From IMG/VR virus record IMGVR_UViG_3300019776_000324, positions 186,001-250,000 of that record: a DNA stretch of 64,000 nucleotides; one strand, 5' to 3'. Below, piece by piece: positions 2,425-63,017 of the stretch. A model generated the notes under the pieces. That model was not told the origin of the DNA. It saw nothing but the letters and a program-made list of their open reading frames with translations, and did no database searches. Both the position numbers and the translations under genes were made by a program. Every line of letters starts with the position of its first letter. Within the stretch, counting starts at the first letter, position 1.

Positions 2425-2462
2425 TCTTGCTCTAGATCCTATAAATATCAATAGGAGCGAGA
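2425..2462 (+). promoter_or_regulatory. T4-type late promoter TATAAATA (2440-2447) inside a hairpin that sequesters the csgF SD
   Basis: TCCTAT(2437-42)/ATAGGA(2451-56) and TCTTGCTC/GAGCGAGA arms flank TATAAATA. Confidence 0.65.
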
Positions 2463-2464
2463 GT

Positions 2465-2917
2465 ATGATAATAATAATAAGATTTACTCTGCTATGTATA
2501 ATTGCGATCTCCTTACAAGCCGTCGCAGTGTCAGCAGAACTGATTCATCAGTTTAACAGCCCCGCCTTCAGCGGAATTGGCTGGTCCAGTCATGTGCTAA
2601 CCATTGAGCAGATGGAAGCCGCACGGGCTCAAAAAATCAAAGACGAAAACAAGGCTGCGCAAGATAAAGCTGAGCGCGACGCTAAAAACACTAACTTGGC
2701 TAAGTTTTTAGTCAATGTGGAAAGTCGTATCTATGCACAATTATCCAAGCAACTAGCAGATGCCATGTTCAGTGATGGCGGAAATAGTGGTAACATGGAC
2801 TTTCAAGGTACAAATATCAATTGGGTTAAAACCGCAACTGATGTTACATTAACAATTACGGAAGCTGGCGGCGGTGTAACGCAGATAACAGTTCCGTTGG
2901 CGAGCTTTGCATTCTAA
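2465..2917 (+). CDS. csgF: Curli assembly protein CsgF-like
   Basis: Signal peptide, then AELIHQFNSPAFSG (cf. CsgF N-terminal FxFxNPxFGG); SRIYAQLSKQL; immediately upstream of csgG. Confidence 0.8.
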   Translation: MIIIIRFTLLCIIAISLQAVAVSAELIHQFNSPAFSGIGWSSHVLTIEQMEAARAQKIKDENKAAQDKAERDAKNTNLAKFLVNVESRIYAQLSKQLADAMFSDGGNSGNMDFQGTNINWVKTATDVTLTITEAGGGVTQITVPLASFAF

Positions 2918-3699
2918 TGAAACGGCTTGCTATACTCTTCTGCACACTAGCCCTCTCAGGTTGCGCTAATCTTCACATGATGGCCGCACAGGAAGAACCT
3001 GTGGTCGTTCAACCCAAAGAAAATTTAATGGCCAAACTACCTACACTAGAAGGCCCACCAATGACTGTAGCAGTGTATGGGTTCAAAGACCTAACTGGAC
3101 AAATGAAACCCAACGACAAACTAGCAGTATTCAGTAAGGCTGTTACGCAAGGTGCAGAAGTATTTTTAATTAAGAGTCTACAAGATTCTAGAGGATGGTT
3201 TAGAGTTGTTGAGCGTGTTGGACTTGACAACCTAATTAAAGAGCGTCAACTTATACGCAATCAGCGTGAAGTGTACGAAGGTAAAGATGCCAAAGCATTA
3301 AAGCCACTAACTGTGGCAGGTGTCTTGATTGAGGGCGGAGTTATTGGCTATGACAGCAATATACGCTCAGGTGGTAACGGTGCCAGATTTTTAGGCATCG
3401 GAGGCAGTCAACAATACAGAGTAGATGAAGTTACAGTTAGTCTTAGACTAATCAGTATTGCATCCGGCGAAGTATTGTTAACCAACGCTGTAAGTAAAAC
3501 CATTTACTCTACAGCACATGATGTAGGTGTACTAAAGTTTGTAGATAATGCAACCAAAGCATTGGAAATTGAAACTGGCACCGCATTAAATGAGCCCACG
3601 ACTTATGCAGTTCGTGTGGCCATTGAGCAGTCAGTTTACGAAATGATAGTAGACGGACAACGAAAGGGTCTTTGGAATTTTGTCCAAAGCAAAAACTAA
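2917..3699 (+). CDS. csgG: Curli secretion channel CsgG (outer-membrane lipoprotein)
   Basis: Lipobox LSGC; VAVYGFKDLTGQ, FSKAVTQG, WFRVVERVGLDNLIKERQLIR, IEGGVIGYDSNIRSGGNGARFLGIG, NEP motifs. Confidence 0.95.
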   Translation: MKRLAILFCTLALSGCANLHMMAAQEEPVVVQPKENLMAKLPTLEGPPMTVAVYGFKDLTGQMKPNDKLAVFSKAVTQGAEVFLIKSLQDSRGWFRVVERVGLDNLIKERQLIRNQREVYEGKDAKALKPLTVAGVLIEGGVIGYDSNIRSGGNGARFLGIGGSQQYRVDEVTVSLRLISIASGEVLLTNAVSKTIYSTAHDVGVLKFVDNATKALEIETGTALNEPTTYAVRVAIEQSVYEMIVDGQRKGLWNFVQSKN

Positions 3700-3700
3700 A

Positions 3701-4321
3701 ATGAAATCAAGTATGACAAGCGTTTGTAAGTTGCTGAGTAAATTACTTACTGTAGTAGGAATCGTAGCCATGGGTAGTGCGATGGCCAATGAAGTTTATG
3801 TCGAGCAAGTAGGCAGTGGATCTACAATTAACATATTACAAGAAGGTTCTGATAATAGAATTGGCACAAGTTTATCGCCAGCCTATATTGGGTCTGGATC
3901 TAATACAGTTAATATTGATCAAATTGGTGCCAACAATACCTTAGACATGGTGGTTAATGGATCATCAACAGATGTTACAGTATCAACCACTGGTAGTAAT
4001 AACACTCAAGAGATTCAGTGCGGTACGACTGGGTCATCTGGTTGCGGTGGTAGTGTAATTACTCAAACCATTACAGGAGATAACAATACTGTACGACAAC
4101 TGCTAGGTGCTGGTGCCAATCATACCAGTAATATTGCAGTAACAGGTGATACCAATACTGTTACTCATACTAGTACTGCCACAGGCACAACCTCGGCAGA
4201 TATTACTGTAACAGGAAACACTAATACAGTAGCAGTTACTCAATCAGGAATGTTGAATCATAGTGTCACGGTTAATAGTAGCGGTAACCTTAATAACATT
4301 AGCATTATTCAGCGAGACTAG
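3701..4321 (+). CDS. Secreted curlin-like (CsgA/CsgB-type) beta-solenoid repeat protein
   Basis: Signal peptide ending AMA-NE; repeated (Q/T)-x-G-x-x-N strands rich in G/S/N/T/Q; lies directly after csgG. Confidence 0.75.
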   Translation: MKSSMTSVCKLLSKLLTVVGIVAMGSAMANEVYVEQVGSGSTINILQEGSDNRIGTSLSPAYIGSGSNTVNIDQIGANNTLDMVVNGSSTDVTVSTTGSNNTQEIQCGTTGSSGCGGSVITQTITGDNNTVRQLLGAGANHTSNIAVTGDTNTVTHTSTATGTTSADITVTGNTNTVAVTQSGMLNHSVTVNSSGNLNNISIIQRD

Positions 4322-5348
4322 TATATCAGCGGTAGGGAAAGTTACAGAACAAACTGGCCCTACCGAGATAGTTAGAAACAAAAAGTCCTCGCCGAGTGCG
4401 GTTAATGCGCCAGTCGAAATGAACGACACTATCATTACGGCCAAGGCAAAGGCAAAATTAACATTTGAAGATAACACCACAATAAACATTACAGAACAAA
4501 GTAAAGTATTGATTGATGACTTTGTTTATGATCCAAAGAACAAAGATGCTGGCAAACTGTCAATGAAGATGGTACAAGGTACAGCTCGATATGCGTCAGG
4601 ACAGATTGCTAAAAACAATCCTCAGGCAGTAAACATACAAACACCCACAGCTACAGTAGCAGTGCGTGGCACAGATTTCTCAATGACAGTAGATGAACTA
4701 GGTCGTAGTCTTGTTATGTTGTTACCAAGTTGCGATAAGAAAGGTTGTGTTACTGGAGCAATTAGTGTGAGTAATGAAGCTGGTACAGTATTTCTTGATG
4801 TGGCATTTCAGGCCACATTAGTTACTAGTATTTCAGTACCGCCACAGGCACCAGTAATAGTAACTATTGATACTGCTAACATTAATAACTTGTTGATTGT
4901 TAGCCCTCCTAAGGAAGTAGTTAAAGACACAAATGAAAACTCTCAGAAAACTGCACTTGATATAAACTTCTTAAACAAAGATCTACTCAAGTACAATGAA
5001 TTAGATAAAAACGAATTGGAAAAATTTAGATCCTTGGACATTAACTTTTTAGATGTAGACTTATTGGTAAACCTATTAGACCTAAGCACTGCACAACTAT
5101 CAGCCAGTCAAGAACAACTGTCTAACGAAGCTTCGTTGTTACCAAAGTATTCGCCAGCTTCTGGAATAACTTACTATTTTAGTGATGACGAAAGTAAAGT
5201 AATTCTTCGTAAAGTTACCACACATATTGCAGAAGTTACTGTACCTGTAGACCACGATGTTGTAATTAATATCACGCAGGATGGTACAGCAGTAACACAG
5301 CAAGTCAATCGCGGTGGAACATCAGTTATCAATATCATTCAGCGTTAG
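4263..5348 (+). CDS. Exported FecR-domain protein
   Basis: Signal peptide; VGKVTE..G, DTIIT, LTFEDNTTINITEQSKVLIDDFVYDP, TPTATVAVRGTDF motifs. Confidence 0.85.
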   Translation: MSRLIVAVTLITLALFSETSISAVGKVTEQTGPTEIVRNKKSSPSAVNAPVEMNDTIITAKAKAKLTFEDNTTINITEQSKVLIDDFVYDPKNKDAGKLSMKMVQGTARYASGQIAKNNPQAVNIQTPTATVAVRGTDFSMTVDELGRSLVMLLPSCDKKGCVTGAISVSNEAGTVFLDVAFQATLVTSISVPPQAPVIVTIDTANINNLLIVSPPKEVVKDTNENSQKTALDINFLNKDLLKYNELDKNELEKFRSLDINFLDVDLLVNLLDLSTAQLSASQEQLSNEASLLPKYSPASGITYYFSDDESKVILRKVTTHIAEVTVPVDHDVVINITQDGTAVTQQVNRGGTSVINIIQR

Positions 5349-5441
5349 CTCCTGAGTAAGTATGCCGTTTATATTTTACGATTAATTCTTAAATAGAATG
5401 CAGGCATTATAACTAAAACAAGCCGGCTACGAAGGATTTTT

Positions 5442-5472
5442 AAGTACCCACTTTATTGTGGGTATTTTTTTC
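5442..5472 (+). terminator. Intrinsic terminator after the FecR gene
   Basis: TACCCAC-tttatt-GTGGGTA followed by a T-tract. Confidence 0.65.
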
Positions 5473-5484
5473 ATTAAATACTCT

Positions 5485-7533
5485 ATGCTTAAAAAAATAA
5501 TAACAAGTCCTTGGACAGCATTACTAACATTGGCACTAGTAGTTGGATTGCGTGTAGCAGATCCTACTTTTGTTGAAAGCGTTCGTCTGCGCTACTTTGA
5601 CACACTAGTAACTAGTAAACCTGCAGAGGTCATTGGAGTTAGTGTTGTAAACATAGACGAGAAAGCCTTAGAAAAATATGGTCAATTCCCTTTCAGTCGC
5701 GATATCTACGCTTCCGTTATTCGAGAACTTTATCGTCGTAACGCTGGTCTGGTGGTTTTTAATATTCTTACTCCTGATCGCGATCGTATGGGTCAGGATC
5801 AATCTTATATCCAAGCACTCAGACAGTTCCCAACCATCCTACCTAGTATTGGATCTACACAAACAAGAAACCAACCAAGAAACCCAGGAACGATTATAAT
5901 TGGACCATACCAAAATCAAATAGTTACATATCCTGGAATTATTGCCAACATACCTGCTGTTGAAAATGCAGCTGCTGGAGTTGGAATTGTAAACACTTTT
6001 CCAGAAGTTGACGGAGTAGTAAGACGCATGCCGTTGGTAGTAATGAGCGATCAAAAACTTTATCCTGGTATGGCCATGGAAGTGTTGCGTGTAGCAGCAG
6101 GAGACTCGACATTCCAGGTTAAACTAAACGAGAATGGTGTAGAGAAAATGCGCATTCCAAAGTTTGGACCTATTGCTACTGATAGTTTAAGTCGTATTTG
6201 GATTGACTGGAGTTTGGTTCCGGACAAGTATAGTTTAACCAATCTGCCAGATGATTTTGAAGGTGAAATAGTTATTGTGGGTGTGTCAGCCCAAGGATTA
6301 AGTAATCCAGTAGCAACAAGCATGGGTGAAATGCTACCACAAGATTTACAAGCAGCAGTATTAGGCACAGTAATAGCAAATAAAGATCGACCTGCTATCA
6401 CTCGCCCAGATTGGGCCGATGGCGCTGAAATTATATTTGTGTTAGTGGCAGGTATTTTATTATTATTTTTATCAAGGTGGGTTTATGTTGGACTTTGTGC
6501 ATCTGTTGTTATACTCGGCGGGAGTTTACTATTTTCTAGTTGGGCTTATGGAAGTCTCGCTTGGCTTGTGGACGCAACTGTTCCGGTCGCTGGTCTTGTC
6601 ATTGTGCTTCTTCATGCTTATGGTGTTAAGTTTGTAAGTGAGTTCTTACAGAAGCAAGCGATCAAGAAACAGTTTGCTGGCTACTGCTCTAAAGAAGTTG
6701 TGGATATGTTGCAGAAGGATCCAGACTTGATCAAGCGTGGTGTGCGTAAGGATGTAAGTGTTATGTTTAGTGACCTGCGTGGCTTTACTCCTATTGGTGA
6801 ACACTACGGTGATGATGTTGCTGGACTTGGCAAGTACATGAACGGCTATATGGATGCTATTAGTCAGCCTATCATGGACAACAAAGGCATGGTTATCAAG
6901 TATGTAGGAGATGCAAGTATGCATATTCACGGTGCTCCTATTGAAGATCCTAATCACGCAAGAACAATCGTTGCTGTCGGTCTACAAATGTTAGATGCTG
7001 TAGACGAGTACACTAAGCTAATGGAAGCACAAGGCTTACCTCCTGCGGCAATGGGCTGGGGTTGTAACTCGGGCATTGGCTTTATTGGCGAAATGGGAAG
7101 CACAGATAGACACAGCTATGACATTTTAGGTGATATGGTTAGTACGGCGGCACGATTAGAAGCTCGTTGCAAAGCATATGGTGTACTATGTATTATTGGT
7201 GCTGAAACTTACAATCGTACCAAAGATGATTTCTTCTACCTGTTGTTAGATAACTTACAACCAAAAGGTAAAACTGTGGCAGACTTGATCTACACAGTAT
7301 TACGCACCAAAGGCGCAGACTACACCAAAGAACTATCAACACATAACAAGATGCATGCATTATACAAAGAGAAAAATTTTGATGCGGCCGCTATCTTATG
7401 TGGAGAATTAATTGGTAAGTTTGGCGGACAAATGGACAAGTACTATAAGATTTGGATCGAGCGTTGCGAGTTTATGAAAGAACAGAACTTACCAGAAAAC
7501 TGGAATGGTGAATTTGTAGCGCACGAAAAATAA
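5485..7533 (+). CDS. CHASE2-domain membrane-bound class III adenylate/guanylate cyclase
   Basis: N-terminal TM; CHASE2 (IDEKALEKYGQFPFSR, DGVVRRMPL); three TMs; cyclase motifs MFSDLRGFT, KYVGDA, GEMGS, YDILGDMVSTAARLE. Start placed at ATG 5485 (ORF track 5458). Confidence 0.92.
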   Translation: MLKKIITSPWTALLTLALVVGLRVADPTFVESVRLRYFDTLVTSKPAEVIGVSVVNIDEKALEKYGQFPFSRDIYASVIRELYRRNAGLVVFNILTPDRDRMGQDQSYIQALRQFPTILPSIGSTQTRNQPRNPGTIIIGPYQNQIVTYPGIIANIPAVENAAAGVGIVNTFPEVDGVVRRMPLVVMSDQKLYPGMAMEVLRVAAGDSTFQVKLNENGVEKMRIPKFGPIATDSLSRIWIDWSLVPDKYSLTNLPDDFEGEIVIVGVSAQGLSNPVATSMGEMLPQDLQAAVLGTVIANKDRPAITRPDWADGAEIIFVLVAGILLLFLSRWVYVGLCASVVILGGSLLFSSWAYGSLAWLVDATVPVAGLVIVLLHAYGVKFVSEFLQKQAIKKQFAGYCSKEVVDMLQKDPDLIKRGVRKDVSVMFSDLRGFTPIGEHYGDDVAGLGKYMNGYMDAISQPIMDNKGMVIKYVGDASMHIHGAPIEDPNHARTIVAVGLQMLDAVDEYTKLMEAQGLPPAAMGWGCNSGIGFIGEMGSTDRHSYDILGDMVSTAARLEARCKAYGVLCIIGAETYNRTKDDFFYLLLDNLQPKGKTVADLIYTVLRTKGADYTKELSTHNKMHALYKEKNFDAAAILCGELIGKFGGQMDKYYKIWIERCEFMKEQNLPENWNGEFVAHEK

Positions 7534-7534
7534 T

Positions 7535-7948
7535 CTAATTTACAGGCACACGAAGATGCACAGCTATGGCGCTGGCACCACCTGCATTAACTTGTGGAAT
7601 AGCGATAGCACATAGATAACTGTAACAAACTTCAGGAAATGCCATGGGTGCAATCTTGTAGGAATTATATCCTGTTACTAGTCCAGCACCAATGCCTATG
7701 TCCCAAGGCCCGTCCTTATATAAAGCATAACGAGCATAACCATAGGTGCTGCCACGATACTCGCTATTGCGATACCAACCACCAGCAACTGACCAACTGT
7801 CTGTAATAGTTTGTTCAAGGCCTGCTCCGTAATTAAATCCATTGAACCCAGGGCGGTCATGCACACTGGCTCCGTTGACTTGGATATATGTTTCTGCTAA
7901 TGATAGATTGCATACTGCTATTAACAGCATAGCTACAAGTGTTTTCAC
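7535..7948 (-). CDS. Small outer-membrane beta-barrel, PagP-like
   Basis: Signal peptide; SVH..FNGFNYGAGLE, GGWYRNSEYRGSTY, GAGLVTGY pattern of alternating beta-strands. Confidence 0.55.
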   Translation of the reverse strand: MKTLVAMLLIAVCNLSLAETYIQVNGASVHDRPGFNGFNYGAGLEQTITDSWSVAGGWYRNSEYRGSTYGYARYALYKDGPWDIGIGAGLVTGYNSYKIAPMAFPEVCYSYLCAIAIPQVNAGGASAIAVHLRVPVN

Positions 7949-7956
7949 ACTTTTAC

Positions 7957-8253: not shown

Positions 8254-8254
8254 T

Positions 8255-8449
8255 TTATTTCTTCCACGGTGATGATGCACCGCCCTTTTCTAGTCTATCT
8301 ATTTTTTTCTGTAAGTCTTTATTAAGTTTGACCCATTGCTTGCCATTTTCAATTGCTTCGTTTAGTGTTAACAAAGCATACATGCTTATAATAATAGCAA
8401 TGCCACCCATGATAAAGCCAATAAACGCATAAGTTACTTCTAACATCAT
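8255..8449 (-). CDS. Hypothetical membrane protein
   Basis: Hydrophobic N-terminus from MMLEVTYAF, then coiled coil. Confidence 0.45.
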   Translation of the reverse strand: MMLEVTYAFIGFIMGGIAIIISMYALLTLNEAIENGKQWVKLNKDLQKKIDRLEKGGASSPWKK

Positions 8450-29883: not shown

Positions 29884-30147
29884 TTAAATTTCTTCTTCTA
29901 ACCGATATCCACATCCATTGGGAATTCCTGACACTGTCAATGCTGTAACATCAGGATATCGACGACAGCCTTCGGGTCTAGTTTCATAGATATTACAAGT
30001 ACCATGTTCAGTATTGTATTCTGGACAAAATGTTTCAACATAAGTTTCTGAATCAGTGTAGGTTCTGACCCTGCAACATCCTCCATTGCAGGCTAGGCCA
30101 CCTAGGCATTGGCCACGAACCACAAGGTTGATCCATATTACACCCAT
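29884..30147 (-). CDS. YkgJ/CxxCxxCC-type cysteine-cluster protein
   Basis: C...CNGGCC...CP......CNIYETRPEGCRRYP. Confidence 0.7.
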   Translation of the reverse strand: MGVIWINLVVRGQCLGGLACNGGCCRVRTYTDSETYVETFCPEYNTEHGTCNIYETRPEGCRRYPDVTALTVSGIPNGCGYRLEEEI

Positions 30148-33100
30148 GCTATGTATTCTATATCAATGTTGCCCAAGTCAATAGCACCACCTGTGATGTT
30201 CATGAATTGTATGCTCAATGTGTCTGCGGCACTTGCCCATGCAGCAGTAATAAAGATACCGTAAGTCAGTGCAGTTCCTACTGAAATAACCACCTTGTGA
30301 TTGGTAGTTAATCCAGTTAAGGTAAATGTTTGTGTACTAGCCGCAGTCTTACCAACCGATGCTGGGTTAATAACTAGGGTGCTTTTTAGTATGCTACTGC
30401 TTGCAAACACACCAGTTAGGGCTGATCCATTACCAACAAAGTTGCCACTAGTGGTAATATTACCTGTGGCAGTTACTTGTCCGGCAGTTGAAATATTGCC
30501 ACTTGTAACATTACCAGTGGCACTTACTATACCACCTGTTAGAACATTACCACCTGTGACATTACCAGTTACACTCAGACTTGATAATGTACCAACGCTG
30601 GTAATGTTAGGCTGACTTGCAGTTAATACTGTGCCAGTTAAGTTGCCAGTTACATTGCCTGTATGAATACCAAATGTGTTGCTGTTGACATTTCCAGCTG
30701 TAATATTTCCGCTGACACTTAATGCGCTAAGAGTTCCAATGGCTGTGATATTAGTCTGACTTGCTGTGGTCAGTGTACCTGTAATATTTGTACCAGATAA
30801 GTTGCCACCTGCAATGTTACCGACAACACTTAAACTTGTCAATGAACCAACACTGGTTATATTAGTTTGAGCAGCAGTGGTTAATGTACCTGTAATATTT
30901 GTACCAGACAAGTTGCCAGCAGTAACATTACCAGAGACACTTAAACTTGATAGTGTGCCAACACTGGTAATATTTGGTTGTGCGGCAGTAGTTAATGTGC
31001 CAGTGACATTGGTAACAATCAAGTTACTACCTACAATATTTCCTAATGCACTTACTATACCGTCGGTATTGATATTGGCTCCACGAACATTACCTGTAGC
31101 ACTTACAATTCCAGTAGTTAATAAATTGCCAGAACTGGTATTACCACTTACACTTACACTAGTTAATGTACCGACGCTAGTGATGTTTGGTTGTGCGTTT
31201 CCAGTTACAGTCACCGCAGTTGTTGCAGTTGTAGCAACTACACCAGTCAACACAGATCCGTTACCAATAAAGAAGCTACCTGTGATGTTGCCGGTGGCTG
31301 AAATTCCATCACCCGAAGAAATAGCACCAGTTGCGCTAACTTGTCCAGTGGTTAAAACATTACCACCAGCAATATTACCCGAGGCAACAACAATACCACC
31401 AGTTCTGATATTGCCACCATCCACATTACCTGTAGCACTTACTAGACCTGTGGTTCTTAGGTTGCCGCCAGAGATATTGCCAGTTGAGCTCAATACACCA
31501 CCAGTATTAATGTTGCCACCTGTGATGTTGCCTGTGGCTGATATCGATGAACTAAATGTTCCAGCTGTGGCAACCAAGTTGGCACCTGTGATGTTGCCTG
31601 TGGCTGATATGGCTGAACTAAATGTTCCAGCGGCAGCAATTAAATTAGCACCTGTGATATTACCTGTGGCACTAATAGTTCCAGCAGTTGCAAAGTTGGC
31701 ACCGGTTACATTACCGCTGGCACTCATCTGCCCACTAGTTCTTAGGTTGCCTGCATTAACATTTCCACTAACACTTGCGCTGGTCAGTATGCCCACGCTG
31801 GTAATATTTGGTTGAGCAGCCGTAGTTAATACAGAACTCGAGAATGGTGCTGTAATATTACCAGTAATACTGAGATTTGTTCCAAACACATTTCCTGATG
31901 CTGACAAGTTTGCGGCCTGTACAAGACCAACTACACTTAGGCCTGTGTCGGTAATAGTAGCACGAAGATTGCTGGTATTTGATCCTCCTGTGACAAACTG
32001 TATTACCTGTCCTGCATTGTTGGTAATCAATAAAAGATTTCCGCCACTAGCTGAAACAAATGTATCACTGTCGCCAAGTATTGATAAATCTGGATTTGAA
32101 AAAGTGCTACTGGTTATACCAATGGCTGCCGAGTAAGATGGACTATCTACACCTAGATCATTTAAAGCAACAAACATAGACATAGCATTAGTACCCGAGC
32201 TATGATTAATCTGTACTAACTGTGCAGGATTATTTTGATTCGCATCAATTTGAACTATTGCATTGCCGTAATTGATACCCTCGTAGGCTGCACCAAAGTG
32301 TGCAGTTCCGTTGGCTACCAAGTTGGCAACAGCTATGTCATCGGCAGTTAACGCTAATGTCTTTAGTCCAGCACCGTCAGTATCCCAACGATTGTTGTTT
32401 AAGTTATATAAGAATGTTCTGTAGTAACTACCATTCGAAACATTACCAAGAATCATACCACCGCCATCAATCTGTGTATTACTTGTAGAATTGTTTGCTA
32501 AGGTAAAGTTTTTATCGTTGATTGAGATGGTATTGGCTGATGTGCTAGTACCAGTGATTACAATATTACCTACAGTGATATTACCAAACTGTACACTAGA
32601 ATTAGTATTAATATTCTGTGGTAGACTTAATGTCAAGTTCTTGCCACCTGAATCAGACACAATAACTTGATTGGTAGTGCCAACTACATTTTGCACACCA
32701 GTGGCATTGATAGCCACATTACCTTGTGTTACTGTCTGTGTAAGACCGGTACCTACTGTTAGACTTTGAACCACTTGTGTAGGAACAAAAGCTGTATTTT
32801 GGAAAGTAGTGTCAGGGAATGTTATACCAGAGCCTGCTACTGGTAATGTAATACCATCAGTGTCAAGTTGCAGTGCATTTACACCAGCACTTCCACCAAC
32901 AGGTGTTAATTTAAATTGTGCGTATGTTCCTTTGCCGCTAGTGTTGGTTACAAAATCTTCCGCAGCAAAGAACTGTAAGCCTGCTACTTGTCCTGTACTA
33001 TAACTAGGAATGCCGTTGGCAACAGTACCAGTCATACCAAGCCCACTAAAGCTGGCTAGAATGTCGTTTTGTAAAACATAGTGAGGATTGTCAGCTGTTC

Positions 33101-35108
33101 CACGGCTTGCTCTAAGAGCAATTAATCCGTAACCTGCTTGCGCTGGCTGTGGGCCTGTGTTGCTAGTTGCATAACCATCAACAGTGATACGAGCAAGAGT
33201 ATTGTCGTTACCAGTAATGTGGATCATACCACCAGCGCCATTAACTGGTTGGTAGTTGCCAGAACTACTACCAACAATGTTTAATGCACCAGCTGTTCCT
33301 GTTGGAATATTATTGGCATTAATAGATACAAATCCGTTATTAAAGGCACTAAACACATTACGAGTGTTTGCACTGTCTCTAACAGCAATAGAACGATTGA
33401 ATACAACATTGCCTGTGGCACCAACAGTACCGATTGTGATGTCTTGTTGCAAATTGCCAATGGTAATTGCATTGTTGTAAAAAGTAAAGTCTGCTACAGT
33501 CAAGCCACCAGCATTGGCAATAACCAAATTGCCACTTTGGGCCAATAAGTTTACAGTGATATCTTCGACTGAGTCTTTGATGTTTAAACCGCCAGTACCA
33601 GCATAGATACTGTTCCAGTAGTTAGTCCCAGTTCCTAGTTCAGATGTATCTGGATTAGTTGGCAAGAATGAACTGTTGGTATAAACATTGCCCGAATCAG
33701 CATTGATACTGATATTACCTGTGCTAGTGGTGATATTGTAGCCACCTTCATCAGTGTATAACAAGGTATTGCTCATTGCAACGGCCGGTACAGCAACTAC
33801 ACCAGATCCTTCTGGAACAATATTAATATTGCCATTGATAGTAGTGCCACTAATGGTTTGACCTGTTATGCTTAGTAGGCCAACTTGCGAAGGAATACCA
33901 GTGAGTTGGCTAGCATTACCAAACAAGTAACTACCTGAGATATTTCCTGGAGTTGTAATGGTGCCAGTGGCTGTAATTAACCCATTAACATTTAAATTGG
34001 CACCGCGAATATTTCCTTGAGCAATAATAACACCGTCGGTGTTTATTGACCCAGTAACACTAAGATTGCCGCCGCTTAGATTACCAGTATAGGTTGGCAA
34101 GTAAGCAGCCACATTGGCATTGCCATACTGTGCTGGCAAGCCAGTTAACTGACTGCCATCGCCGATAAAATACCCAGCTGTGATATTACCTGTGGTACTG
34201 ACACTAGTATTACTATTATTGGTTAAAACTGGTTGTCCAGCAACAGTCAGTACATTACCTGTAGTGCCTAAACCAACACCACCAATGTAAACTGTGTTAG
34301 AACTGAACCATGCATCACGCCACCAGTTGGTACTGTTGCCCAAACTATAAGTTACATTGGCTGCAGGAATAATATTGCTGGCCACATTGGCAAAGTTTAC
34401 GCCACTTGGTGCTGCATCAACCCATTGGCTACCATCATCGTCGGTGTACCAAACATACAAACGACCCGATACTTCATCCCACCAAAGTGTTTGATCAGTT
34501 GGATTTGTAGGAGCTGAACTGCTTTGAATTACTCCACCACCAATTGCTTGTCCATTTGCATAGGATATGTTTATACTGCTGATCCAACTGTTGGTATTAG
34601 ATTGATATAAGAAAGTTGCAATATTTGAATTTGCACCAACCAATATGCCTGACCCATTGGCTGCATTGGCAGTGCTGGCTGAGTTTGCCAGATGTATTGT
34701 CTTTGAATCTGTTGTAATGTTACCCAGTTCAATAATGTCGCCTTGAACTGTTAAATCACCACCTACTGTTAAATTACCAGCTATTGATAAGCCACCCGAC
34801 ACATCAACATATTGCAAATACGCTGTAGCCCAGCGTTGTGTAGGGCTACCTAGGTTTCTAATATTAGCCAAGTTTGGTACAATGCTTACATTGGCTTGTA
34901 CTACTCCTATACCGTTTGGTGCTAGAATCAAATTACCATTGGTATTTGTAGTTAATATAGTATTGTTGGCAATACGAACATTACTTAACACTGGCCCTGC
35001 GGCAAAAACCTGATCAAAATTCAAGTTTACATCATTAAATGCGGTTCTTAAAGGGTCGCCAGTACCATCATTTGGTAGTGCGCCGATGTTGATTACATAT
35101 TGAGTCAT
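30138..35108 (-). CDS. Giant (1656 aa) Gly/Asn/Thr-rich fibre / baseplate-associated protein
   Basis: N-terminal INIGALPNDGTGDPLRTAF..VNLNF (T4 gp9/gp10-like start); dozens of SATGNITGGN repeats and repeated LTTAAQPNITSVGTL units. Confidence 0.8.
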   Translation of the reverse strand: MTQYVINIGALPNDGTGDPLRTAFNDVNLNFDQVFAAGPVLSNVRIANNTILTTNTNGNLILAPNGIGVVQANVSIVPNLANIRNLGSPTQRWATAYLQYVDVSGGLSIAGNLTVGGDLTVQGDIIELGNITTDSKTIHLANSASTANAANGSGILVGANSNIATFLYQSNTNSWISSINISYANGQAIGGGVIQSSSAPTNPTDQTLWWDEVSGRLYVWYTDDDGSQWVDAAPSGVNFANVASNIIPAANVTYSLGNSTNWWRDAWFSSNTVYIGGVGLGTTGNVLTVAGQPVLTNNSNTSVSTTGNITAGYFIGDGSQLTGLPAQYGNANVAAYLPTYTGNLSGGNLSVTGSINTDGVIIAQGNIRGANLNVNGLITATGTITTPGNISGSYLFGNASQLTGIPSQVGLLSITGQTISGTTINGNINIVPEGSGVVAVPAVAMSNTLLYTDEGGYNITTSTGNISINADSGNVYTNSSFLPTNPDTSELGTGTNYWNSIYAGTGGLNIKDSVEDITVNLLAQSGNLVIANAGGLTVADFTFYNNAITIGNLQQDITIGTVGATGNVVFNRSIAVRDSANTRNVFSAFNNGFVSINANNIPTGTAGALNIVGSSSGNYQPVNGAGGMIHITGNDNTLARITVDGYATSNTGPQPAQAGYGLIALRASRGTADNPHYVLQNDILASFSGLGMTGTVANGIPSYSTGQVAGLQFFAAEDFVTNTSGKGTYAQFKLTPVGGSAGVNALQLDTDGITLPVAGSGITFPDTTFQNTAFVPTQVVQSLTVGTGLTQTVTQGNVAINATGVQNVVGTTNQVIVSDSGGKNLTLSLPQNINTNSSVQFGNITVGNIVITGTSTSANTISINDKNFTLANNSTSNTQIDGGGMILGNVSNGSYYRTFLYNLNNNRWDTDGAGLKTLALTADDIAVANLVANGTAHFGAAYEGINYGNAIVQIDANQNNPAQLVQINHSSGTNAMSMFVALNDLGVDSPSYSAAIGITSSTFSNPDLSILGDSDTFVSASGGNLLLITNNAGQVIQFVTGGSNTSNLRATITDTGLSVVGLVQAANLSASGNVFGTNLSITGNITAPFSSSVLTTAAQPNITSVGILTSASVSGNVNAGNLRTSGQMSASGNVTGANFATAGTISATGNITGANLIAAAGTFSSAISATGNITGANLVATAGTFSSSISATGNITGGNINTGGVLSSTGNISGGNLRTTGLVSATGNVDGGNIRTGGIVVASGNIAGGNVLTTGQVSATGAISSGDGISATGNITGSFFIGNGSVLTGVVATTATTAVTVTGNAQPNITSVGTLTSVSVSGNTSSGNLLTTGIVSATGNVRGANINTDGIVSALGNIVGSNLIVTNVTGTLTTAAQPNITSVGTLSSLSVSGNVTAGNLSGTNITGTLTTAAQTNITSVGSLTSLSVVGNIAGGNLSGTNITGTLTTASQTNITAIGTLSALSVSGNITAGNVNSNTFGIHTGNVTGNLTGTVLTASQPNITSVGTLSSLSVTGNVTGGNVLTGGIVSATGNVTSGNISTAGQVTATGNITTSGNFVGNGSALTGVFASSSILKSTLVINPASVGKTAASTQTFTLTGLTTNHKVVISVGTALTYGIFITAAWASAADTLSIQFMNITGGAIDLGNIDIEYIAWV
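31519..31670 (-). repeat. 66-bp tandem repeat inside the fibre gene
   Basis: CCTGTGATGTTGCCTGTGGCTGATAT at 31519 and 31585, a variant at 31651 (22-aa unit ISATGNITGANLxAxAGTFSSx). Confidence 0.85.
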
Positions 35109-35242
35109 AGGTGGAATTAGCCTTTTTCATTATTTATGGCTAAATGCTTAACCTAATGGCATTGCGCATAGTGCAATACTCTGCTATACTAGCATCATGC
35201 TGTTGTTAAACAGCGTTTAACATAGAAAGGTAATTTTTACAA

Positions 35243-57506: not shown

Positions 57507-57955
57507 TGATGGATGCCCATTCTCAAATGGCCGAAGCACTAGCTGATAGCATGACTGTATCGGTTAGTGCTCCTGGAACTTATAGTACAATTACCAATGG
57601 CGGGTTTGCCTACTCTAACACTGCTATTACCAACAACGGTGTTGCTACTGGATCCTTAGGACCGTACACTGTTAGCACTGGTTATTCACAACCATGGTTC
57701 AGCAACTCTGCTAGTCCAAAAATCCGTTTAGATGGTGAAGACGCTGACATAGAAGTCAACGGCGAAAGCCTCATGGGCTTGATGAAAGAAATCCGCGAAC
57801 GACTAAATCTCATAACCATTAACGAAAAGATGGAAAAGGAATGGGACGAACTACGAGCCTTAGGTGATCAATATCGTGCCCTAGAAGCCAAGTTAAAAGA
57901 ACAAGGCGAAATGTGGAACAAGCTAAAAGCTATGCCACCGCCTGATATCAAGTAA
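57506..57955 (+). CDS. Hypothetical protein with a C-terminal coiled coil
   Basis: ADIEVNGESL...IRERLNLI...EWDELRALGDQYRALE. Confidence 0.6.
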   Translation: MMDAHSQMAEALADSMTVSVSAPGTYSTITNGGFAYSNTAITNNGVATGSLGPYTVSTGYSQPWFSNSASPKIRLDGEDADIEVNGESLMGLMKEIRERLNLITINEKMEKEWDELRALGDQYRALEAKLKEQGEMWNKLKAMPPPDIK

Positions 57956-59337: not shown

Positions 59338-59439
59338 GTAATATACCCAGATAACGGCAAAAACCTATCAAAAATCATAGATTTTTATTAACATCAATAG
59401 TATAATACTAAGTATTTTAGAGAACAGTAAAACAACCAG

Positions 59440-59700
59440 GCTGTCATTTGATTGATCAGCGGAGGATTACAATCTAGAACTGTTCCAAAACGGACGGGCT
59501 TGTGCCGTAAAGCAAGCAGTAGTATAAGAGGACTTCGGAACTCCTCTTCAATGACAAATGGTATAGGCCGTGTGAGAAACAAAGCACCGCTTAAAGAGTA
59601 TGGCACTGAGGCCCGAGGTCTTAATCTGTCTCCAATTCTATACACTTCATCTGTCTTTGCGCCCATCCTGGGAATCCGCTGATACGCACAGTATTGCGTC
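59440..59700 (+). ncRNA. Long structured 5' leader / candidate ncRNA upstream of a cell wall hydrolase
   Basis: 9-bp long-range stem ATCAGCGGA(59455-63)/TCCGCTGAT(59675-83); AGAGGA..TTCG..TCCTCT hairpin; ACGCA/TGCGT hairpin next to the SD. Confidence 0.5.
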
Positions 59701-59712
59701 GAGGAGACGAAG

Positions 59713-60375
59713 ATGAAACTTAAAAAACTTCTTATATCGTTATTAACAGTAGTAAGCAGTAGTGCATTTGCAGTAGATGTAGCAGAAGTAAAAGCAGAAG
59801 TCTCTTATAGAGATCAAATTGTTGACCAAGCCAGCAAGTTTGTTGAGCGCACAGTTAACATAATTGCAACTCCATTCTTGTCAGACAAGGATGTAGAGTG
59901 TCTAGCTCGTAACATATTTTACGAGTCAGGTAGCGAACCAACTGAGGGCAAAATTGCCGTTGGTCTTGTTACTATAAATCGTGCCCAAGATCCACGCTTT
60001 GGTAAGAGCGTATGCGAAGTTGTCAAAGCTCGCACAGTGGTCACTAAAACACGCGAAGTCAAACGCACAGAAATGGTTCGAGTAGGGTATTTTGGCCCTC
60101 CTGAAAAAGTTGTTAGAACAGAAGAAGTAGTTCAACAAGTGCCAGTATGTCAGTTTTCGTGGACATGCCAGGGCTATGCCCGTGCTCCAAAACCCACAGA
60201 TGAACGCTGGGTAGAAAGTCAGCGTATTGCTGAAGGTATTGCTCGTGGAGACTACGAAGAATATCGCGGCAAATACGGCTCTGCACTATTCTTCCACTCT
60301 ACAGGAGTGCGCCCAATTTGGGCTAAAACCAAGAAGTTTGTAACCAAGACTGGACAGCACTTATTCTACGAATAG
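59713..60375 (+). CDS. Cell wall hydrolase (SleB/Hydrolase_2), secreted
   Basis: Signal peptide; CLARNIFYESGSE, AVGLVTINR, CQFSW, FFHS, GQHLFY. Confidence 0.9.
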   Translation: MKLKKLLISLLTVVSSSAFAVDVAEVKAEVSYRDQIVDQASKFVERTVNIIATPFLSDKDVECLARNIFYESGSEPTEGKIAVGLVTINRAQDPRFGKSVCEVVKARTVVTKTREVKRTEMVRVGYFGPPEKVVRTEEVVQQVPVCQFSWTCQGYARAPKPTDERWVESQRIAEGIARGDYEEYRGKYGSALFFHSTGVRPIWAKTKKFVTKTGQHLFYE

Positions 60376-60437
60376 GTTGACCAAATATTCGCATTTTGTT
60401 ATAATAGTAGTATGAATAACAAATGTGAGTTCGTATA

Positions 60438-60833
60438 ATGGCATTCCATCTTGAAGGACCCTGGTTAAGCACAACTGGACGCAAGAAAGGCCCACGCAAA
60501 TGGGCTAGTTCTGAAGCCAAGCGTTTAGCACAAAAGCGACAAGCTGACTGGGATCGCAAGCTCGTTGAGTTTGACAAGATGGCGCCTAAATTTAGTACAG
60601 GACCATATAATGCACCTAAAAAATCTATCACAGACTTTATCCCAAAAACGCCACCAGGTCGTGAAACGGCTCAAATACCTAGCCAAGATACTGGTTGGGT
60701 TACCTGCGTAAAGCCCACAGATAACGAATACACAGGCACTAAAATCAAAGGCATTGGTACTATGCACAAGTCCAATGCCGTGCCTGTATTCTCTGATGAA
60801 GAGGCAATTGAGATAAGTAAAATGCGTAGATAA
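60438..60833 (+). CDS. Conserved-looking phage hypothetical protein
   Basis: YTGTKIKGIGTMHKSNAVPVFS..EAIEISKMRR; early promoter at 60377. Confidence 0.65.
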   Translation: MAFHLEGPWLSTTGRKKGPRKWASSEAKRLAQKRQADWDRKLVEFDKMAPKFSTGPYNAPKKSITDFIPKTPPGRETAQIPSQDTGWVTCVKPTDNEYTGTKIKGIGTMHKSNAVPVFSDEEAIEISKMRR

Positions 60834-61078: not shown

Positions 61079-62083
61079 ATGATAGAAGATAAGCATGGGC
61101 TAGCTCATGCGATTCCTATTCAATCGGGCACTATTGCCCTGCGTATTAAAGTTGAAGATTTTGGACAACACAGTCTTTTACCGTTCTTAAATTTGTTTGG
61201 CAAATTGTACATTGGAAACATTAACCAAGAATACTTTGCCCAACTGTTCACTCCTAAACGACGCCGATTCCTACAAGATTTAAACTCTGCTACAACCAAT
61301 AGAGATTTAGAATTTCAATTAAGCATGGCAAGACTAGCACTGACCACTGAGTGGAAGTGGCCAGCCTTTGTTAACATGATATATTCAGATGGCGAACTCG
61401 AGTGGGCCACAGGCGGCAGTAGAATACTTGCCAGTGGATTAAGCAAGCCCAATCCGGAACAAACTATATCAGTATTATTATTTGATCAAACTAAAACAGC
61501 AGTTGATCAGTGGTTGGTTGATCCAGTGGAAATTACTACAGATCAACAGTTACATCAAGTTCTTAATTTAACTTATACACAAATGCAAAGCCCAACTATA
61601 CAATTATCATCAGTGTTAAAACAAGTTGGCGATCATACTAGATTATTTTTGCATGGCATTATTGACGAAGAACTACAAGGATATCAAAACTCCAACGAAT
61701 CAACTGAATTAAAATTGCTGGATAATCTAAGGCAGTGGCAAACAAATAACCCTAGGCCGCAAATAGAAATTTATACAAATTGGCCCGAGCTAATAAGCGA
61801 TAGTTTAGGCGTATGGGATTGCCGTATTGTAGGGCCTATTCCTCAAGTGAGTAGTCCTGATTTCAAGCCAGGACACTTGGAACGCTTGGCCAAGATGAAC
61901 GCAGAAAACAACAAGGCCAAACATATATTGTATGTTAGGAATCCTAGACCCATTGATTTGTCAGAGTTTTTGGTTTGGATAGATAACAAACACACTGCCT
62001 TTATTGAAGCAAACTGGGACTTTTTATTGTATCAAAGCACACTGGAATACCAGTCAAGAATGATTGGTTTCAGTACCATTTAA
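61079..62083 (+). CDS. Hypothetical protein
   Basis: 334-aa ORF, no recognisable motif. Confidence 0.6.
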   Translation: MIEDKHGLAHAIPIQSGTIALRIKVEDFGQHSLLPFLNLFGKLYIGNINQEYFAQLFTPKRRRFLQDLNSATTNRDLEFQLSMARLALTTEWKWPAFVNMIYSDGELEWATGGSRILASGLSKPNPEQTISVLLFDQTKTAVDQWLVDPVEITTDQQLHQVLNLTYTQMQSPTIQLSSVLKQVGDHTRLFLHGIIDEELQGYQNSNESTELKLLDNLRQWQTNNPRPQIEIYTNWPELISDSLGVWDCRIVGPIPQVSSPDFKPGHLERLAKMNAENNKAKHILYVRNPRPIDLSEFLVWIDNKHTAFIEANWDFLLYQSTLEYQSRMIGFSTI

Positions 62084-62096
62084 AATAAATATTAAT

Positions 62097-62639
62097 ATGC
62101 GTAACGAAATCAACTTAATTGAAGCAAGCACCCGTCCAGCTAAACTGGAAACTACTCCACTGCCATATGCAGAAAAGGCCTTAGATCCTGTAATGAGCAA
62201 AGAGACCATAGAATATCACTATGAACATCTTGCAAAAGGCTACGCAAAACGCTATAATAGTGGTGAAGGCAATGCAGACTTTAACCGTGCTGGTAGCTTT
62301 TTACACAATAAATTTTTCCCACAACTACAACCGCCCAAAGGCGCAAACCGTCCCAAAGGAGCAGTACTTGAACTCATTGAAACAAACTTCAAAACATACG
62401 AAGACTTTAAAGATGAATTTAAAAAAGTGGCCATGGCTGTGCAGGGATCGGGCTGGGTATACCTTAGCACATCGGGCACGATTAAAACCATTCCAAACCA
62501 TCAGGTTAGAACAGATATCTGTTTACTCGTTGATTGGTGGGAGCATGCTTGGGCACTAGATTATCAATGGGACAAAGAAAAGTACCTGGATAATATTTGG
62601 AAAATTATTAATTGGAATGTTTGTAGCGAAAGATTATGA
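62097..62639 (+). CDS. Fe/Mn superoxide dismutase (compact)
   Basis: LPY...[31 protein letters not shown]; all four metal ligands present. Confidence 0.9.
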
Positions 62640-62962
62640 TAACAGTAACCGAACAAGCAGTAGCTAAAATCAAGGATATTTTAGCAGAAGAAAACAACCC
62701 AGATCTCAAACTCCGTGTATTTGTACAGGGAGGCGGATGTTCAGGCATGAGCTATGGCTTTACCTTGGACGATGCCCAGGCAGAAGATGACTGGGATTTA
62801 GAAGTTTCTGGCATAAAAGTGCTGGTTGACAGCATGTCGGGTGGCTACCTACAAGGTGCTACAGTTGACTACAAAGAAAGTGATTACGGTAGCAGTTTTA
62901 CCATTGATAATCCACAAGCAACTACAACCTGTGGTTGCGGTTCCAGCTTTAGTCCTTACTAA
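62636..62962 (+). CDS. erpA: A-type Fe-S carrier ErpA/IscA
   Basis: [38 protein letters not shown]. Confidence 0.9.
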
Positions 62963-62981
62963 AATACCCAAAACACCTTAA

Positions 62982-63017
62982 ATCTAGTTTCTGCTAAATA
63001 CAGCAGAGGAACTAGAT
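62982..63017 (+). promoter_or_regulatory. Late promoter TAAATA within an RBS-sequestering hairpin
   Basis: ATCTAGTT-TCTGCT/aaatac/AGCAGA-gg-AACTAGAT; SD GAGGA lies in the 3' arm. Confidence 0.7.

What the first reader, a model, noticed from the sequence alone, without database searches (positions are those of the whole stretch)
2425..63017. Late promoters embedded in RBS-sequestering hairpins, including ahead of the curli operon
Seen: three cases where TAAATA lies in or at the loop of an inverted repeat whose downstream arm contains the SD: csgF (2425-2462), the giant fibre gene (minus strand, TTAGCC/GGCTAA arms at 35117-35143, weaker SD) and the fibre gene at 63020 (62982-63017). Known: T4 silences early read-through of some late genes (e.g. 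lysozyme e, soc, I-TevI) this way. Inference: the curli system is deliberately restricted to late infection like structural genes, which points to a role at lysis or assembly, or on the virion.
Basis: partly seen in the sequence, partly recalled or inferred. Interest (0 to 1): 0.6.

Follow-up and report, generated by a model that had tools for sequence, protein, structure and literature searches.

The report
Promoter-embedded RBS-masking hairpins in jumbo phage
In a 344-kb freshwater jumbo phage, the curli operon and one tail-fibre gene each start with a T4-style late promoter sitting inside a conserved RNA hairpin that hides the ribosome-binding site, a known T4 trick; the third reported case is no better than chance.

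Summary
The window belongs to a complete 344-kb phage of the Rak2/PA5oct/Atu_ph07 group. It encodes a gp55-like late sigma factor.

TAAATA behaves as its late-promoter core. It is strongly depleted overall, oriented, intergenic, and sits ahead of the portal, sheath, tube and baseplate genes.

Two of the three hairpins are real:
- csgF: -15.6 kcal/mol, z -3.6.
- Fibre at 63020: -18.3 kcal/mol, z -4.8.
- Giant fibre: -5.9 kcal/mol, z -1.0, not beyond chance.

Promoter-flanking hairpins are not a general rule in this genome. Across about 160 related loci they are specific to two gene families, CsgF and the fibres. Their arms co-vary, they cover the Shine-Dalgarno sequence up to the ATG, and they stay with csgF whatever gene lies upstream.

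By T4 geometry the late transcript starts in the 3' arm. Only RNA that begins upstream would therefore be masked. No RNA data exist, so timing and start sites are inferred.

The mechanism is a new member of the T4 e/I-TevI kind.

Side findings:
- Many late genes look leaderless (TAAATA-N4-5-ATG), including the curli-linked cyclase.
- The whole curli module is shared with pelagiphage HTVC008M, where csgF carries TATAAATA-N5-ATG.

The parts
2425..2468 (+). csgF leader hairpin. Inner helix is 2437-2442 with 2451-2456. Outer helix is 2428-2433 with 2460-2465, plus 2425-2426 with 2467-2468. It encloses the promoter motif and pairs both the SD and the AUG.
   Evidence: -15.6 kcal/mol, z -3.64. Covariation in relatives.
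2440..2447 (+). TATAAATA, a full T4 late-promoter consensus. The predicted +1 is near 2453, the first base of the SD AGGAG (2453-2457).
   Evidence: Geometry -13..-6 comes from PMC2988020. The start site is inferred, not mapped.
2465..2917 (+). csgF
   Evidence: PF10614, 4.8e-15.
2917..3699 (+). csgG
   Evidence: PF03783, 1.4e-52.
3701..4321 (+). Secreted curlin-repeat protein, a CsgA/B-like candidate.
   Evidence: PF07012, 22.9 bits against a cut-off of 20.7; signal peptide followed by N/Q/G-rich repeats.
4263..5348 (+). FecR-domain protein. Its start codon is uncertain.
   Evidence: PF04773, 2.2e-12. Sequence seen.
5442..5467 (+). Intrinsic-terminator-like hairpin with a T-run, closing the csgF-csgG-curlin-FecR unit.
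   Evidence: Equivalent hairpins with different stems occur in L027 and L033.
5475..5480 (+). TAAATA placed 4 nt before the ATG at 5485. No room for an SD, so the mRNA is predicted to be leaderless.
   Evidence: The 4-nt spacing is kept in L027, L033, L037 and L065 while the spacer letters vary.
5485..7533 (+). CHASE2 plus adenylate/guanylate cyclase.
   Evidence: PF05226, 1.1e-36; PF00211, 9.8e-14.
62976..63023 (+). Fibre-gene leader hairpin, core 62982-63017. TAAATA (62995-63000) is at the loop. SD GAGG (63006-63009) and A63020/G63022 of the ATG lie in or next to helices.
   Evidence: -18.3 kcal/mol, z -4.77. Relatives.
63020..64000 (+). Tail-fibre gene, 487 aa, running past the window end. 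It has the N-terminal motif shared with the giant fibre.
   Evidence: phrog_677/8859, weak; fibre family cluster.
35117..35143 (-). Weak 6-bp inverted repeat around TAAATA (35131-35136), upstream of the giant fibre gene.
   Evidence: -5.9 kcal/mol, z -1.04; broken in 2 of 8 relatives.
30138..35108 (-). Giant fibre gene, 1656 aa.
60377..60405 (+). Strong sigma-70-type early promoter (TTGACC-17-TATAAT). It heads the + strand unit that runs towards the fibre gene, with no convincing + strand terminator before 63020.
62086..62091 (+). TAAATA placed 5 nt before the ATG at 62097 of the Fe/Mn superoxide dismutase gene. This is a leaderless-type late promoter just upstream of the IscA and fibre genes.

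Best explanation
TAAATA (full form TATAAATA) is the core of the phage's late promoters and is read by host RNA polymerase carrying the phage's gp55-like sigma factor.

At csgF and at the fibre gene at 63020, this promoter sits in the loop, or the 5' side, of a hairpin. The 3' arm of that hairpin carries the Shine-Dalgarno sequence and reaches the AUG.

RNA that begins upstream contains both arms. That RNA could come from early sigma-70-type promoters or from neighbouring late promoters. It folds, and the gene is not translated from it.

RNA that begins at the gene's own promoter starts about 6 nt after the motif, inside the 3' arm. It lacks the 5' arm and is open for ribosomes. Translation of the curli operon and of this fibre is therefore tied to firing of their own late promoter.

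Shown here: the motif statistics, the gp55 homologue, the hairpins, their covariation and their gene-family specificity.

Inferred: the start site (from T4 geometry), the late timing, the existence of read-through RNA, and the translational effect.

The giant-fibre hairpin is probably not functional.
For: Promoter identity:
- A gp55-like protein is encoded at genome 73389-74342 (phrog_12791 7e-72, phrog_234 8e-22).
- TAAATA occurs 29 times in the window against 78.8 +/- 7.9 expected.
- Within 40 nt upstream of starts there are 58 sense and 10 antisense copies. 36 of 46 ATAAATA copies are intergenic in a genome that is 92% coding.
- The motif precedes the portal, baseplate wedge, sheath, tube, adaptor and virion structural protein genes.
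- Early promoters are all on one strand and TAAATA is on both, as in T4.
- The same motif was predicted as the late promoter in the related phages CBB and GAP32 (PMC5259590).

Hairpin stability: z is -3.64 and -4.77. Transcripts cut at the predicted start site are essentially unfolded.

Comparative evidence:
- For 30 unique csgF leaders, cognate arm pairing is -12.7 kcal/mol against -8.0 for non-cognate pairs (p = 3e-6).
- 173 unique SD-led sites were grouped by downstream protein. 59% of 39 CsgF sites and 44% of 27 fibre sites reach -12 kcal/mol or lower. About 0% do in most of the other families, and 5% do in non-cognate pairs.
- The SD is paired with pre-start-site bases at mean probability 0.73 for CsgF and 0.56 for fibres, against 0.36 elsewhere (p = 5e-9 and 8e-4).
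- 37 of 39 CsgF sites have a median of 13 pairs spanning the motif. The helix ends about 2 nt before the ATG although the motif-to-ATG distance varies from 15 to 36 nt. There are 9 distinct arm-sequence clusters.
- The upstream gene differs in relatives and is sometimes divergent, with intergenic regions of 40-122 nt. The hairpin therefore belongs to csgF.
- The sense RNA folds better than the antisense at csgF sites, 27 against 12 (p = 0.007).

Precedent: T4 gene e and I-TevI (PMC3014915).
Against: - There is no RNA evidence of any kind. Only DNA metagenome runs hold the sequence.
- Inside this genome, late promoters in general are not flanked by pairing arms (p = 0.17 and 0.55). TIR masking is only marginally commoner at motif genes (p = 0.07).
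- Fibre-family sites show no sense/antisense asymmetry.
- Alignment-based counting on the fibre helix finds only one covarying pair.
- SOD, immediately upstream of the fibre gene, has its own late-type promoter. Masked read-through need not be early.
- gp33 and gp45 homologues were not detected, so the late machinery may differ from T4 and the start-site offset is assumed.
- Related sequences are not independent, so the p-values overstate the evidence.
Confidence: 0.6

Rival explanations
1. The hairpins act on transcription, not translation. They would be terminators, pause sites or 3'-end stabilisers for the upstream transcription unit, and the next gene's promoter merely overlaps them because intergenic space is short.
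For: In several relatives the csgF hairpin is GC-rich and followed by a T-run just before the ATG (L081, L086, L087, L095, L097). A true terminator followed at once by TAAATA stands before the cyclase gene.
Against: The two window hairpins have no T-run and are not called by the terminator scan. The hairpin stays with csgF while the upstream gene changes, including divergent upstream genes, and intergenic regions reach 122 nt. The 3' arm tracks the SD and ATG whatever the promoter distance.
Confidence: 0.15
2. The inverted repeat works in DNA. A cruciform or single-strand hairpin would present or hide the TAAATA element and so tune promoter strength or couple it to replication or supercoiling.
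For: The arms abut the motif. The median gap to the 5' arm is -1 to 1 nt and the 3' arm starts 3-5 nt after it. Fibre-family sites show no preference for the sense RNA fold. T4 late promoters are sensitive to supercoiling (PMC2988020).
Against: At csgF sites 55 of 444 spanning pairs are G.U. The sense strand folds better than the antisense (p = 0.007), which a DNA cruciform would not select for. The helices extend to the ATG irrespective of promoter distance. Most late promoters of the phage have no such repeat.
Confidence: 0.1
3. The hairpin is an RNA operator with a conserved loop, bound by a phage translational repressor in the manner of T4 gp43 or RegA sites. TAAATA would be conserved as the loop rather than as a promoter.
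For: Variable stems with an invariant loop motif are typical of protein-binding hairpins.
Against: The same motif precedes about 60 other genes without any hairpin. It stands at fixed distances from the SD or the ATG, including structural genes. No candidate repressor was identified.
Confidence: 0.05
4. For the giant fibre gene only: the 6-bp repeat is a chance feature of a conserved AT-rich leader.
For: z is -1.04 and 34 of 200 shuffles fold as well. The helix is broken in 2 of 8 relatives with no two-sided compensation. No early promoters lie on the minus strand, so there is no early read-through to mask.
Against: The site ranks 4th of 31 by arm pairing and 14th of 445 by TIR masking. The fibre family as a whole is enriched for such hairpins.
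Confidence: 0.7

Closest known systems
T4 gene e (lysozyme), soc and I-TevI: a late promoter inside a hairpin that sequesters the RBS of early read-through transcripts. Aeh1 mobE is a further case.
   Same: A TATAAATA-type promoter lies in the 5' part or loop of a hairpin whose 3' arm holds the SD and AUG. Transcripts from that promoter lack the 5' arm. A gp55-type sigma is present. The precedent is documented in PMC3014915; soc is cited from my own knowledge.
   Different: The host phage is a Rak2/PA5oct-like jumbo phage with no detectable gp33 or gp45. The genes gated are a curli secretion operon and a tail fibre. The device is kept by covariation across dozens of uncultured relatives. The start site and the translational effect are unproven here. 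Similar masks also sit at some early promoters of the same phage.
Predicted ATAAATA late promoters of Rak2-like jumbo phages CBB and GAP32
   Same: The same core motif is found ahead of structural genes, together with a gp55-like sigma factor and no gp33 or gp45 homologue (PMC5259590).
   Different: That work reports neither hairpins nor the two spacing classes (leaderless-type and SD-led).
Phage-borne curli modules of pelagimyophages (HTVC008M) and OM43 phage Melnitz
   Same: The gene order is the same: csgF, csgG, curlin-repeat protein, FecR-domain protein, with a cyclase downstream in HTVC008M. CsgG is about 47% identical. HTVC008M csgF and its cyclase each have TAAATA-N5-ATG.
   Different: Those phages are 140-kb Kyanoviridae. 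Their csgF has no SD-masking hairpin: it is leaderless-type in HTVC008M and embedded in an operon in Melnitz. The papers could not predict late promoters and left the function open (PMC7029224, PMC9004378).

Membership tests
T4 e/soc/I-TevI-type promoter-gated RBS hairpin | A gp55-type late promoter motif lies within the hairpin (5' arm or loop). | tested here: met
   TATAAATA at 2440-2447, CTAAATA at 62994-63000, ATAAATA at 35131-35137 on the minus strand. Fold positions.
T4 e/soc/I-TevI-type promoter-gated RBS hairpin | The hairpin is more stable than composition-matched chance. | tested here: met
   csgF z -3.64 and fibre 63020 z -4.77. Not met for the giant fibre (z -1.04).
T4 e/soc/I-TevI-type promoter-gated RBS hairpin | The 3' arm contains the SD and/or the start codon. 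| tested here: met
   structures. The SD is paired with pre-start-site bases at probability 0.73 (CsgF family) and 0.56 (fibre family), against 0.36 elsewhere.
T4 e/soc/I-TevI-type promoter-gated RBS hairpin | The late transcript starts downstream of the 5' arm. | not testable with these tools
   Inferred from T4 geometry (motif at -13..-6) and from the sharp peak at 5 nt of TAAATA-to-ATG spacing. No RNA runs exist.
T4 e/soc/I-TevI-type promoter-gated RBS hairpin | Transcription from upstream promoters reads into the gene. | tested here: inconclusive
   An early promoter at 60377 and a late-type promoter at 62086 lie upstream of the fibre gene, with no convincing + strand terminator between. 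For csgF the nearest early promoter is 1.8 kb before the window start, with a convergent gene in between.
T4 e/soc/I-TevI-type promoter-gated RBS hairpin | The structure is conserved by compensatory change. | tested here: met
   Cognate against non-cognate arms, p = 3e-6. Nine arm-sequence clusters. One CG/GC covarying pair in the alignable fibre subset.
T4 e/soc/I-TevI-type promoter-gated RBS hairpin | Translation from long transcripts is repressed. | not testable with these tools
   Needs reporters or toeprinting.
T4-type late transcription apparatus | gp55 late sigma factor | tested here: met
T4-type late transcription apparatus | gp33 co-activator and gp45 clamp | tested here: not met
   gp33 gives only E = 0.03, inside an SbcC-like ORF. 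gp45 gives no hit. Remote homologues could be missed. The same absence is reported for CBB.
Intrinsic (Rho-independent) terminator | A GC-rich stem followed by a U-run. | tested here: not met
   Neither window hairpin is called and neither has a T-run. The feature is met in a minority of relatives' csgF hairpins.
Curli / type VIII secretion operon | CsgG channel, CsgF and a curlin-repeat subunit. | tested here: met
   The curlin hit is marginal (22.9 against 20.7 bits) but is backed by a signal peptide and repeats. CsgE and CsgD were not found among the operon genes scanned.
Leaderless mRNA (side finding) | The AUG is at, or within a few nt of, the transcript's 5' end. | not testable with these tools
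   Only geometry is available: peaks at 4-5 nt spacing, none at 10-16 nt.

The most novel reading that the evidence does not exclude
In this jumbo-phage clade, and in T4-like pelagimyophages, translation of many late genes is hard-wired to initiation at the gene's own gp55-type promoter. Two interchangeable designs would do this: leaderless mRNAs (TAAATA-N4-5-AUG) or an SD masked by sequence upstream of the start site. The horizontally shared curli module (csgF-csgG-curlin-FecR plus cyclase) is always wired in one of these ways. That would mark it as a strictly late, dosage-controlled function.
Probability: 0.4. Interest if true: 0.7.

Novelty: new member of a known kind. Interest (0 to 1): 0.55.

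Why it matters
The function of phage-borne curli genes is an open question; the published ideas are lysis timing, a pore, or 'sibling capture'. This work gives a testable regulatory fact for them. In two very different phage groups the module sits behind a late-type promoter, and its translation appears tied to that promoter. That argues against an early host-takeover role.

It also extends a classic T4 post-transcriptional device to uncultured jumbo phages, with comparative rather than single-genome support.

Finally, it points to widespread leaderless late mRNAs in T4-superfamily phages. For that group, earlier work (pelagimyophages) could not find late promoters at all.

Tried and rejected
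- RNA evidence: the one run search found only five freshwater DNA metagenome runs with small word shares and no RNA.
- DNA similarity: megablast of window 1-12000 against the phage records found nothing.
- Rfam: no family matched in the window.
- A general rule 'late promoter = hairpin': rejected for this genome.
- T4 gp33 and gp45 searches: no credible hit.
- Column-wise covariation on an alignment of fibre leaders: weak, because the stems sit in different registers in divergent relatives. I replaced it with cognate against non-cognate arm pairing.
- CACTTAAT, conserved upstream of csgF hairpins: not enriched in the window, so it was not pursued.
- A first guess that the gene upstream of csgF starts at 2047 was wrong by one base. 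The in-frame ATG is at 2046.
- Not run: the large protein searches, structure prediction and complex prediction. Family scans already settled the proteins that matter here.


Full report
**What the window is.** It is bases 186001-250000 of a 344,244-bp virus record with direct terminal repeats, rated complete, at about 40% G+C. The portal protein is 47-52% identical to those of Pseudomonas phage PA5oct, Agrobacterium phage Atu_ph07, Xanthomonas, Erwinia and Serratia jumbo phages and Klebsiella phage RaK2. The phage therefore belongs to the T4-related jumbo-phage supergroup. The only runs that hold it are freshwater DNA metagenomes.

Positions 2465-7533 encode five proteins:
- CsgF
- CsgG
- a secreted curlin-repeat protein
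- a FecR-domain protein
- a CHASE2 adenylate/guanylate cyclase

**The observation.** All three sites exist at the stated coordinates.
- The csgF hairpin (2425-2468) folds at -15.6 kcal/mol, z -3.64. It pairs four bases of the SD AGGAG and two bases of the AUG.
- The fibre hairpin (core 62982-63017, extended 62976-63023) folds at -18.3 kcal/mol, z -4.77. AAAUAC is the loop and the SD GAGG lies at a helix/bulge junction.
- The giant-fibre repeat (35117-35143, minus strand) is a 6-bp stem with a 15-nt loop at -5.9 kcal/mol, z -1.04. That is not beyond chance.
- Transcripts cut at the predicted start sites are essentially unstructured.

**Is TAAATA a promoter?**
- The full octamer TATAAATA is rare: 2 copies in the window and 14 in the genome.
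- The hexamer TAAATA is strongly purged: 29 in the window against 78.8 +/- 7.9 expected.
- It is oriented: 58 sense against 10 antisense copies within 40 nt upstream of called starts. It is also intergenic: 36 of 46 ATAAATA copies, in a 92% coding genome.
- It precedes the portal, baseplate wedge, tail sheath, tail tube, head-tail adaptor, fibre/spike and several virion structural protein genes.
- The genome encodes a gp55-like late sigma factor.
- 41 intergenic sigma-70-type promoters (TTGAC-N17-19-TATAAT) all lie on the + strand, whereas TAAATA sites lie on both strands. T4 shows the same polarity rule (PMC2988020).
- The related phages CBB and GAP32 were predicted to use ATAAATA with a gp55-like sigma, also without gp33 or gp45 (PMC5259590). 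I likewise found no gp33 or gp45.

I take TAAATA as the late-promoter core with high confidence. The word 'late' rests on analogy only.

**Geometry.** In T4 the octamer occupies -13 to -6, so +1 is the sixth base after the motif. Here the distance from TAAATA to an ATG that opens a long ORF is bimodal.
- One class has 4, 5 or 7 nt (10, 11 and 10 cases). There are no cases at 10-16 nt.
- The other class has 17-26 nt with an SD in between.
- In 1.05 Mb of related contigs the peak is at exactly 5 nt: 55 cases, against 0 for the reverse-complement control.

This fits T4 geometry. It implies two architectures: leaderless-type mRNAs, and mRNAs that begin at or just before the SD. For the three sites the predicted 5' ends are about 2453, about 63006 and about 35125. 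Each lies in or after the 3' arm's start, so the 5' arm would be absent from the gene's own transcript.

**Is the hairpin a general property of late promoters?** No.
- In this genome, 31 SD-led TAAATA sites show no more arm pairing than non-cognate arm combinations (p = 0.17). They also show no more than pseudo-sites in motif-less genes (p = 0.55).
- TIR masking is only marginally higher at motif genes (p = 0.07).
They are the extremes, not the rule.

**Relatives.** Seventy-six viral contigs carry csgG at 61-85% identity. Seventy-six carry the IscA-type gene that precedes the fibre. Eight carry the giant fibre.

Upstream of csgF, TAAATA is retained in most relatives. It is flanked by inverted repeats of different sequence in different lineages.
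- Cognate 5'/3' flank pairing is -12.7 kcal/mol against -8.0 for non-cognate combinations (n = 30 unique leaders, p = 3e-6).
- I grouped 173 unique SD-led sites by the downstream protein. The CsgF family (39 sites) has mean -13.8, with 59% at -12 or lower. The fibre family (27 sites) has mean -10.4, with 44% at -12 or lower.
- Nearly every other family sits near background, and non-cognate pairs reach -12 in 5% of cases.
- The SD core is paired with bases upstream of the predicted start at mean probability 0.73 (CsgF) and 0.56 (fibres), against 0.36 elsewhere.
- In 37 of 39 CsgF leaders a median of 13 pairs span the motif. The helix ends about 2 nt before the ATG although the motif-to-ATG distance ranges from 15 to 36 nt. 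The arms fall into 9 sequence clusters.
- The gene upstream of csgF differs among relatives. There are at least eight different genes, some divergent, with intergenic regions of 40-122 nt. The hairpin belongs to csgF, not to its neighbour.
- At csgF sites the sense RNA folds better than the antisense (27 against 12, p = 0.007). Fibre sites show no such asymmetry.
- Where csgF follows tRNA genes (L077-L084), the hairpin is replaced by TAAATA 6-8 nt before the ATG, with no SD.
- The giant-fibre helix is kept in 6 of 8 relatives and broken in 2. It shows only a one-sided G.U change.

These sequences are related, so the p-values are optimistic. The number of distinct stems is the sturdier evidence.

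**Transcription context.**
- A consensus early promoter at 60377 heads a + strand unit: two unknown ORFs, Fe/Mn superoxide dismutase and an IscA-type protein. It runs into the fibre gene without a convincing + strand terminator.
- The SOD gene's real start is the ATG at 62097, five nt after ATAAATA. Read-through into the fibre gene may therefore be late as well as early.
- For csgF, no + strand terminator is predicted between the window start and 2465. The nearest early promoter lies 1.8 kb before the window, and a convergent late gene lies in between.
- The minus strand carries no early promoters. An early-silencing role for the giant-fibre repeat therefore has no obvious substrate.
- Four early promoters also have their spacer and -10 region paired with their own gene's initiation region. 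They are at window 60377 and 43022 and at genome 302799 and 174052.

The device therefore looks like 'translate only from the gene's own promoter', of which 'late only' is a special case.

**Rivals.**
- A terminator or 3'-stabiliser role fits a minority of relatives whose hairpin is followed by a T-run. It does not fit the window's hairpins, nor the fact that the hairpin follows csgF rather than the upstream gene.
- A DNA-level role (cruciform at the promoter) fits the arms abutting the motif and the lack of strand asymmetry at fibre sites. It does not fit the G.U usage at csgF or the extension of helices to the ATG.
- A protein-binding operator with a conserved loop is unlikely. The same motif serves about 60 hairpin-less genes.

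**Comparison with what is known.**
- The architecture matches T4 gene e and I-TevI (PMC3014915). It also matches soc, which I cite from my own knowledge.
- Membership features tested and met: the promoter motif in the hairpin, stability (two sites), the SD/AUG in the 3' arm, covariation, and a gp55 homologue.
- Features not testable here: the start site and the translational effect.
- Phage curli genes are already known in pelagimyophages and in Melnitz, with function unresolved (PMC7029224, PMC9004378).
- The module order csgF-csgG-curlin-FecR, with a cyclase downstream in HTVC008M, is the same there.
- In HTVC008M, csgF carries a perfect TATAAATA five nt before its ATG, and the cyclase has TAAATA-N5-ATG. 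So do nine genes in the first 50 kb, most of them structural.

The curli module is thus behind late-type promoters in two distant phage groups.

**Verdict.**
- The T4-like interpretation is the best-supported reading for those two.
- The inference about what curli does is not addressed by this evidence, beyond making an early role unlikely.
- As a mechanism it is a new member of a known kind. The leaderless-type late promoters and the shared, late-wired curli module are the more novel by-products.

Noticed in passing
Whole genome. In the window: 5475-5487, 16623-16635, 46470-46482, 62086-62099, 2027-2018 (minus), 10540-10525 (minus).: The distance from TAAATA to the start codon is bimodal. One class has 4-7 nt with no room for an SD. 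The other has 17-26 nt with an SD. None fall at 10-16 nt. Relatives peak sharply at 5 nt, which puts the T4-type +1 on the A of the AUG. This implies many leaderless late mRNAs.
   Followed up: partly
L192 (Pelagibacter phage HTVC008M, 1-50000): Nine genes in the first 50 kb have TAAATA exactly 5 nt before the ATG. They include csgF, the cyclase, tape measure, head closure and baseplate genes. A published study reported that late promoters could not be predicted in pelagimyophages.
   Followed up: partly
Window 13819, 23228, 24240, 35622, 36118, 43022, 52841, 53136, 53616, 53878, 55575, 57252, 60377 (and 41 intergenic sites genome-wide).: These are near-identical early promoter cassettes, all on the + strand: TTGACC, a patterned 17-nt spacer and TATAAT. 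Most then have a conserved AGTAGTATAGT box, AAGGAGC and the ATG.
   Followed up: partly
Window 60377-60458 and 43022-43100; genome 302799-302880 and 174052-174130.: Some early promoters have their spacer and -10 region base-paired with their own gene's SD/AUG, down to -28 kcal/mol. This is the same 'own-promoter-only' design as at the late csgF and fibre promoters.
   Followed up: partly
Window 2465-7533; L190 and L191.: The module csgF-csgG-curlin repeat-FecR, plus a cyclase, is shared with Kyanoviridae phages Melnitz and HTVC008M (CsgG about 47% identical). It is present in at least 76 uncultured viral contigs. Here it includes a plausible secreted curlin subunit.
   Followed up: partly
Window 2416-2423 and the same place in L027, L030, L033, L036, L042, L048, L054.: A conserved CACTTAAT-like word lies about 17-20 nt upstream of the csgF TAAATA in many relatives. 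It is not enriched elsewhere in the window and remains unexplained.
   Followed up: partly
Window 299-1113, 57955-60375, 62097-62962.: Auxiliary genes are present: Hsp20, ClpS, a radical-SAM protein, a cell-wall hydrolase, Fe/Mn superoxide dismutase and an IscA-type Fe-S protein.
   Followed up: no
Window 753-805: The ClpS gene has TAAATA 46 nt upstream. It is followed at once by an 8-bp stem-loop that would sit at the 5' end of the late transcript, a different arrangement from the masking hairpins.
   Followed up: no
L077-L084 (csgF loci): In one sub-lineage csgF directly follows tRNA genes. There it has TAAATA 6-8 nt before the ATG instead of an SD plus hairpin.
   Followed up: no
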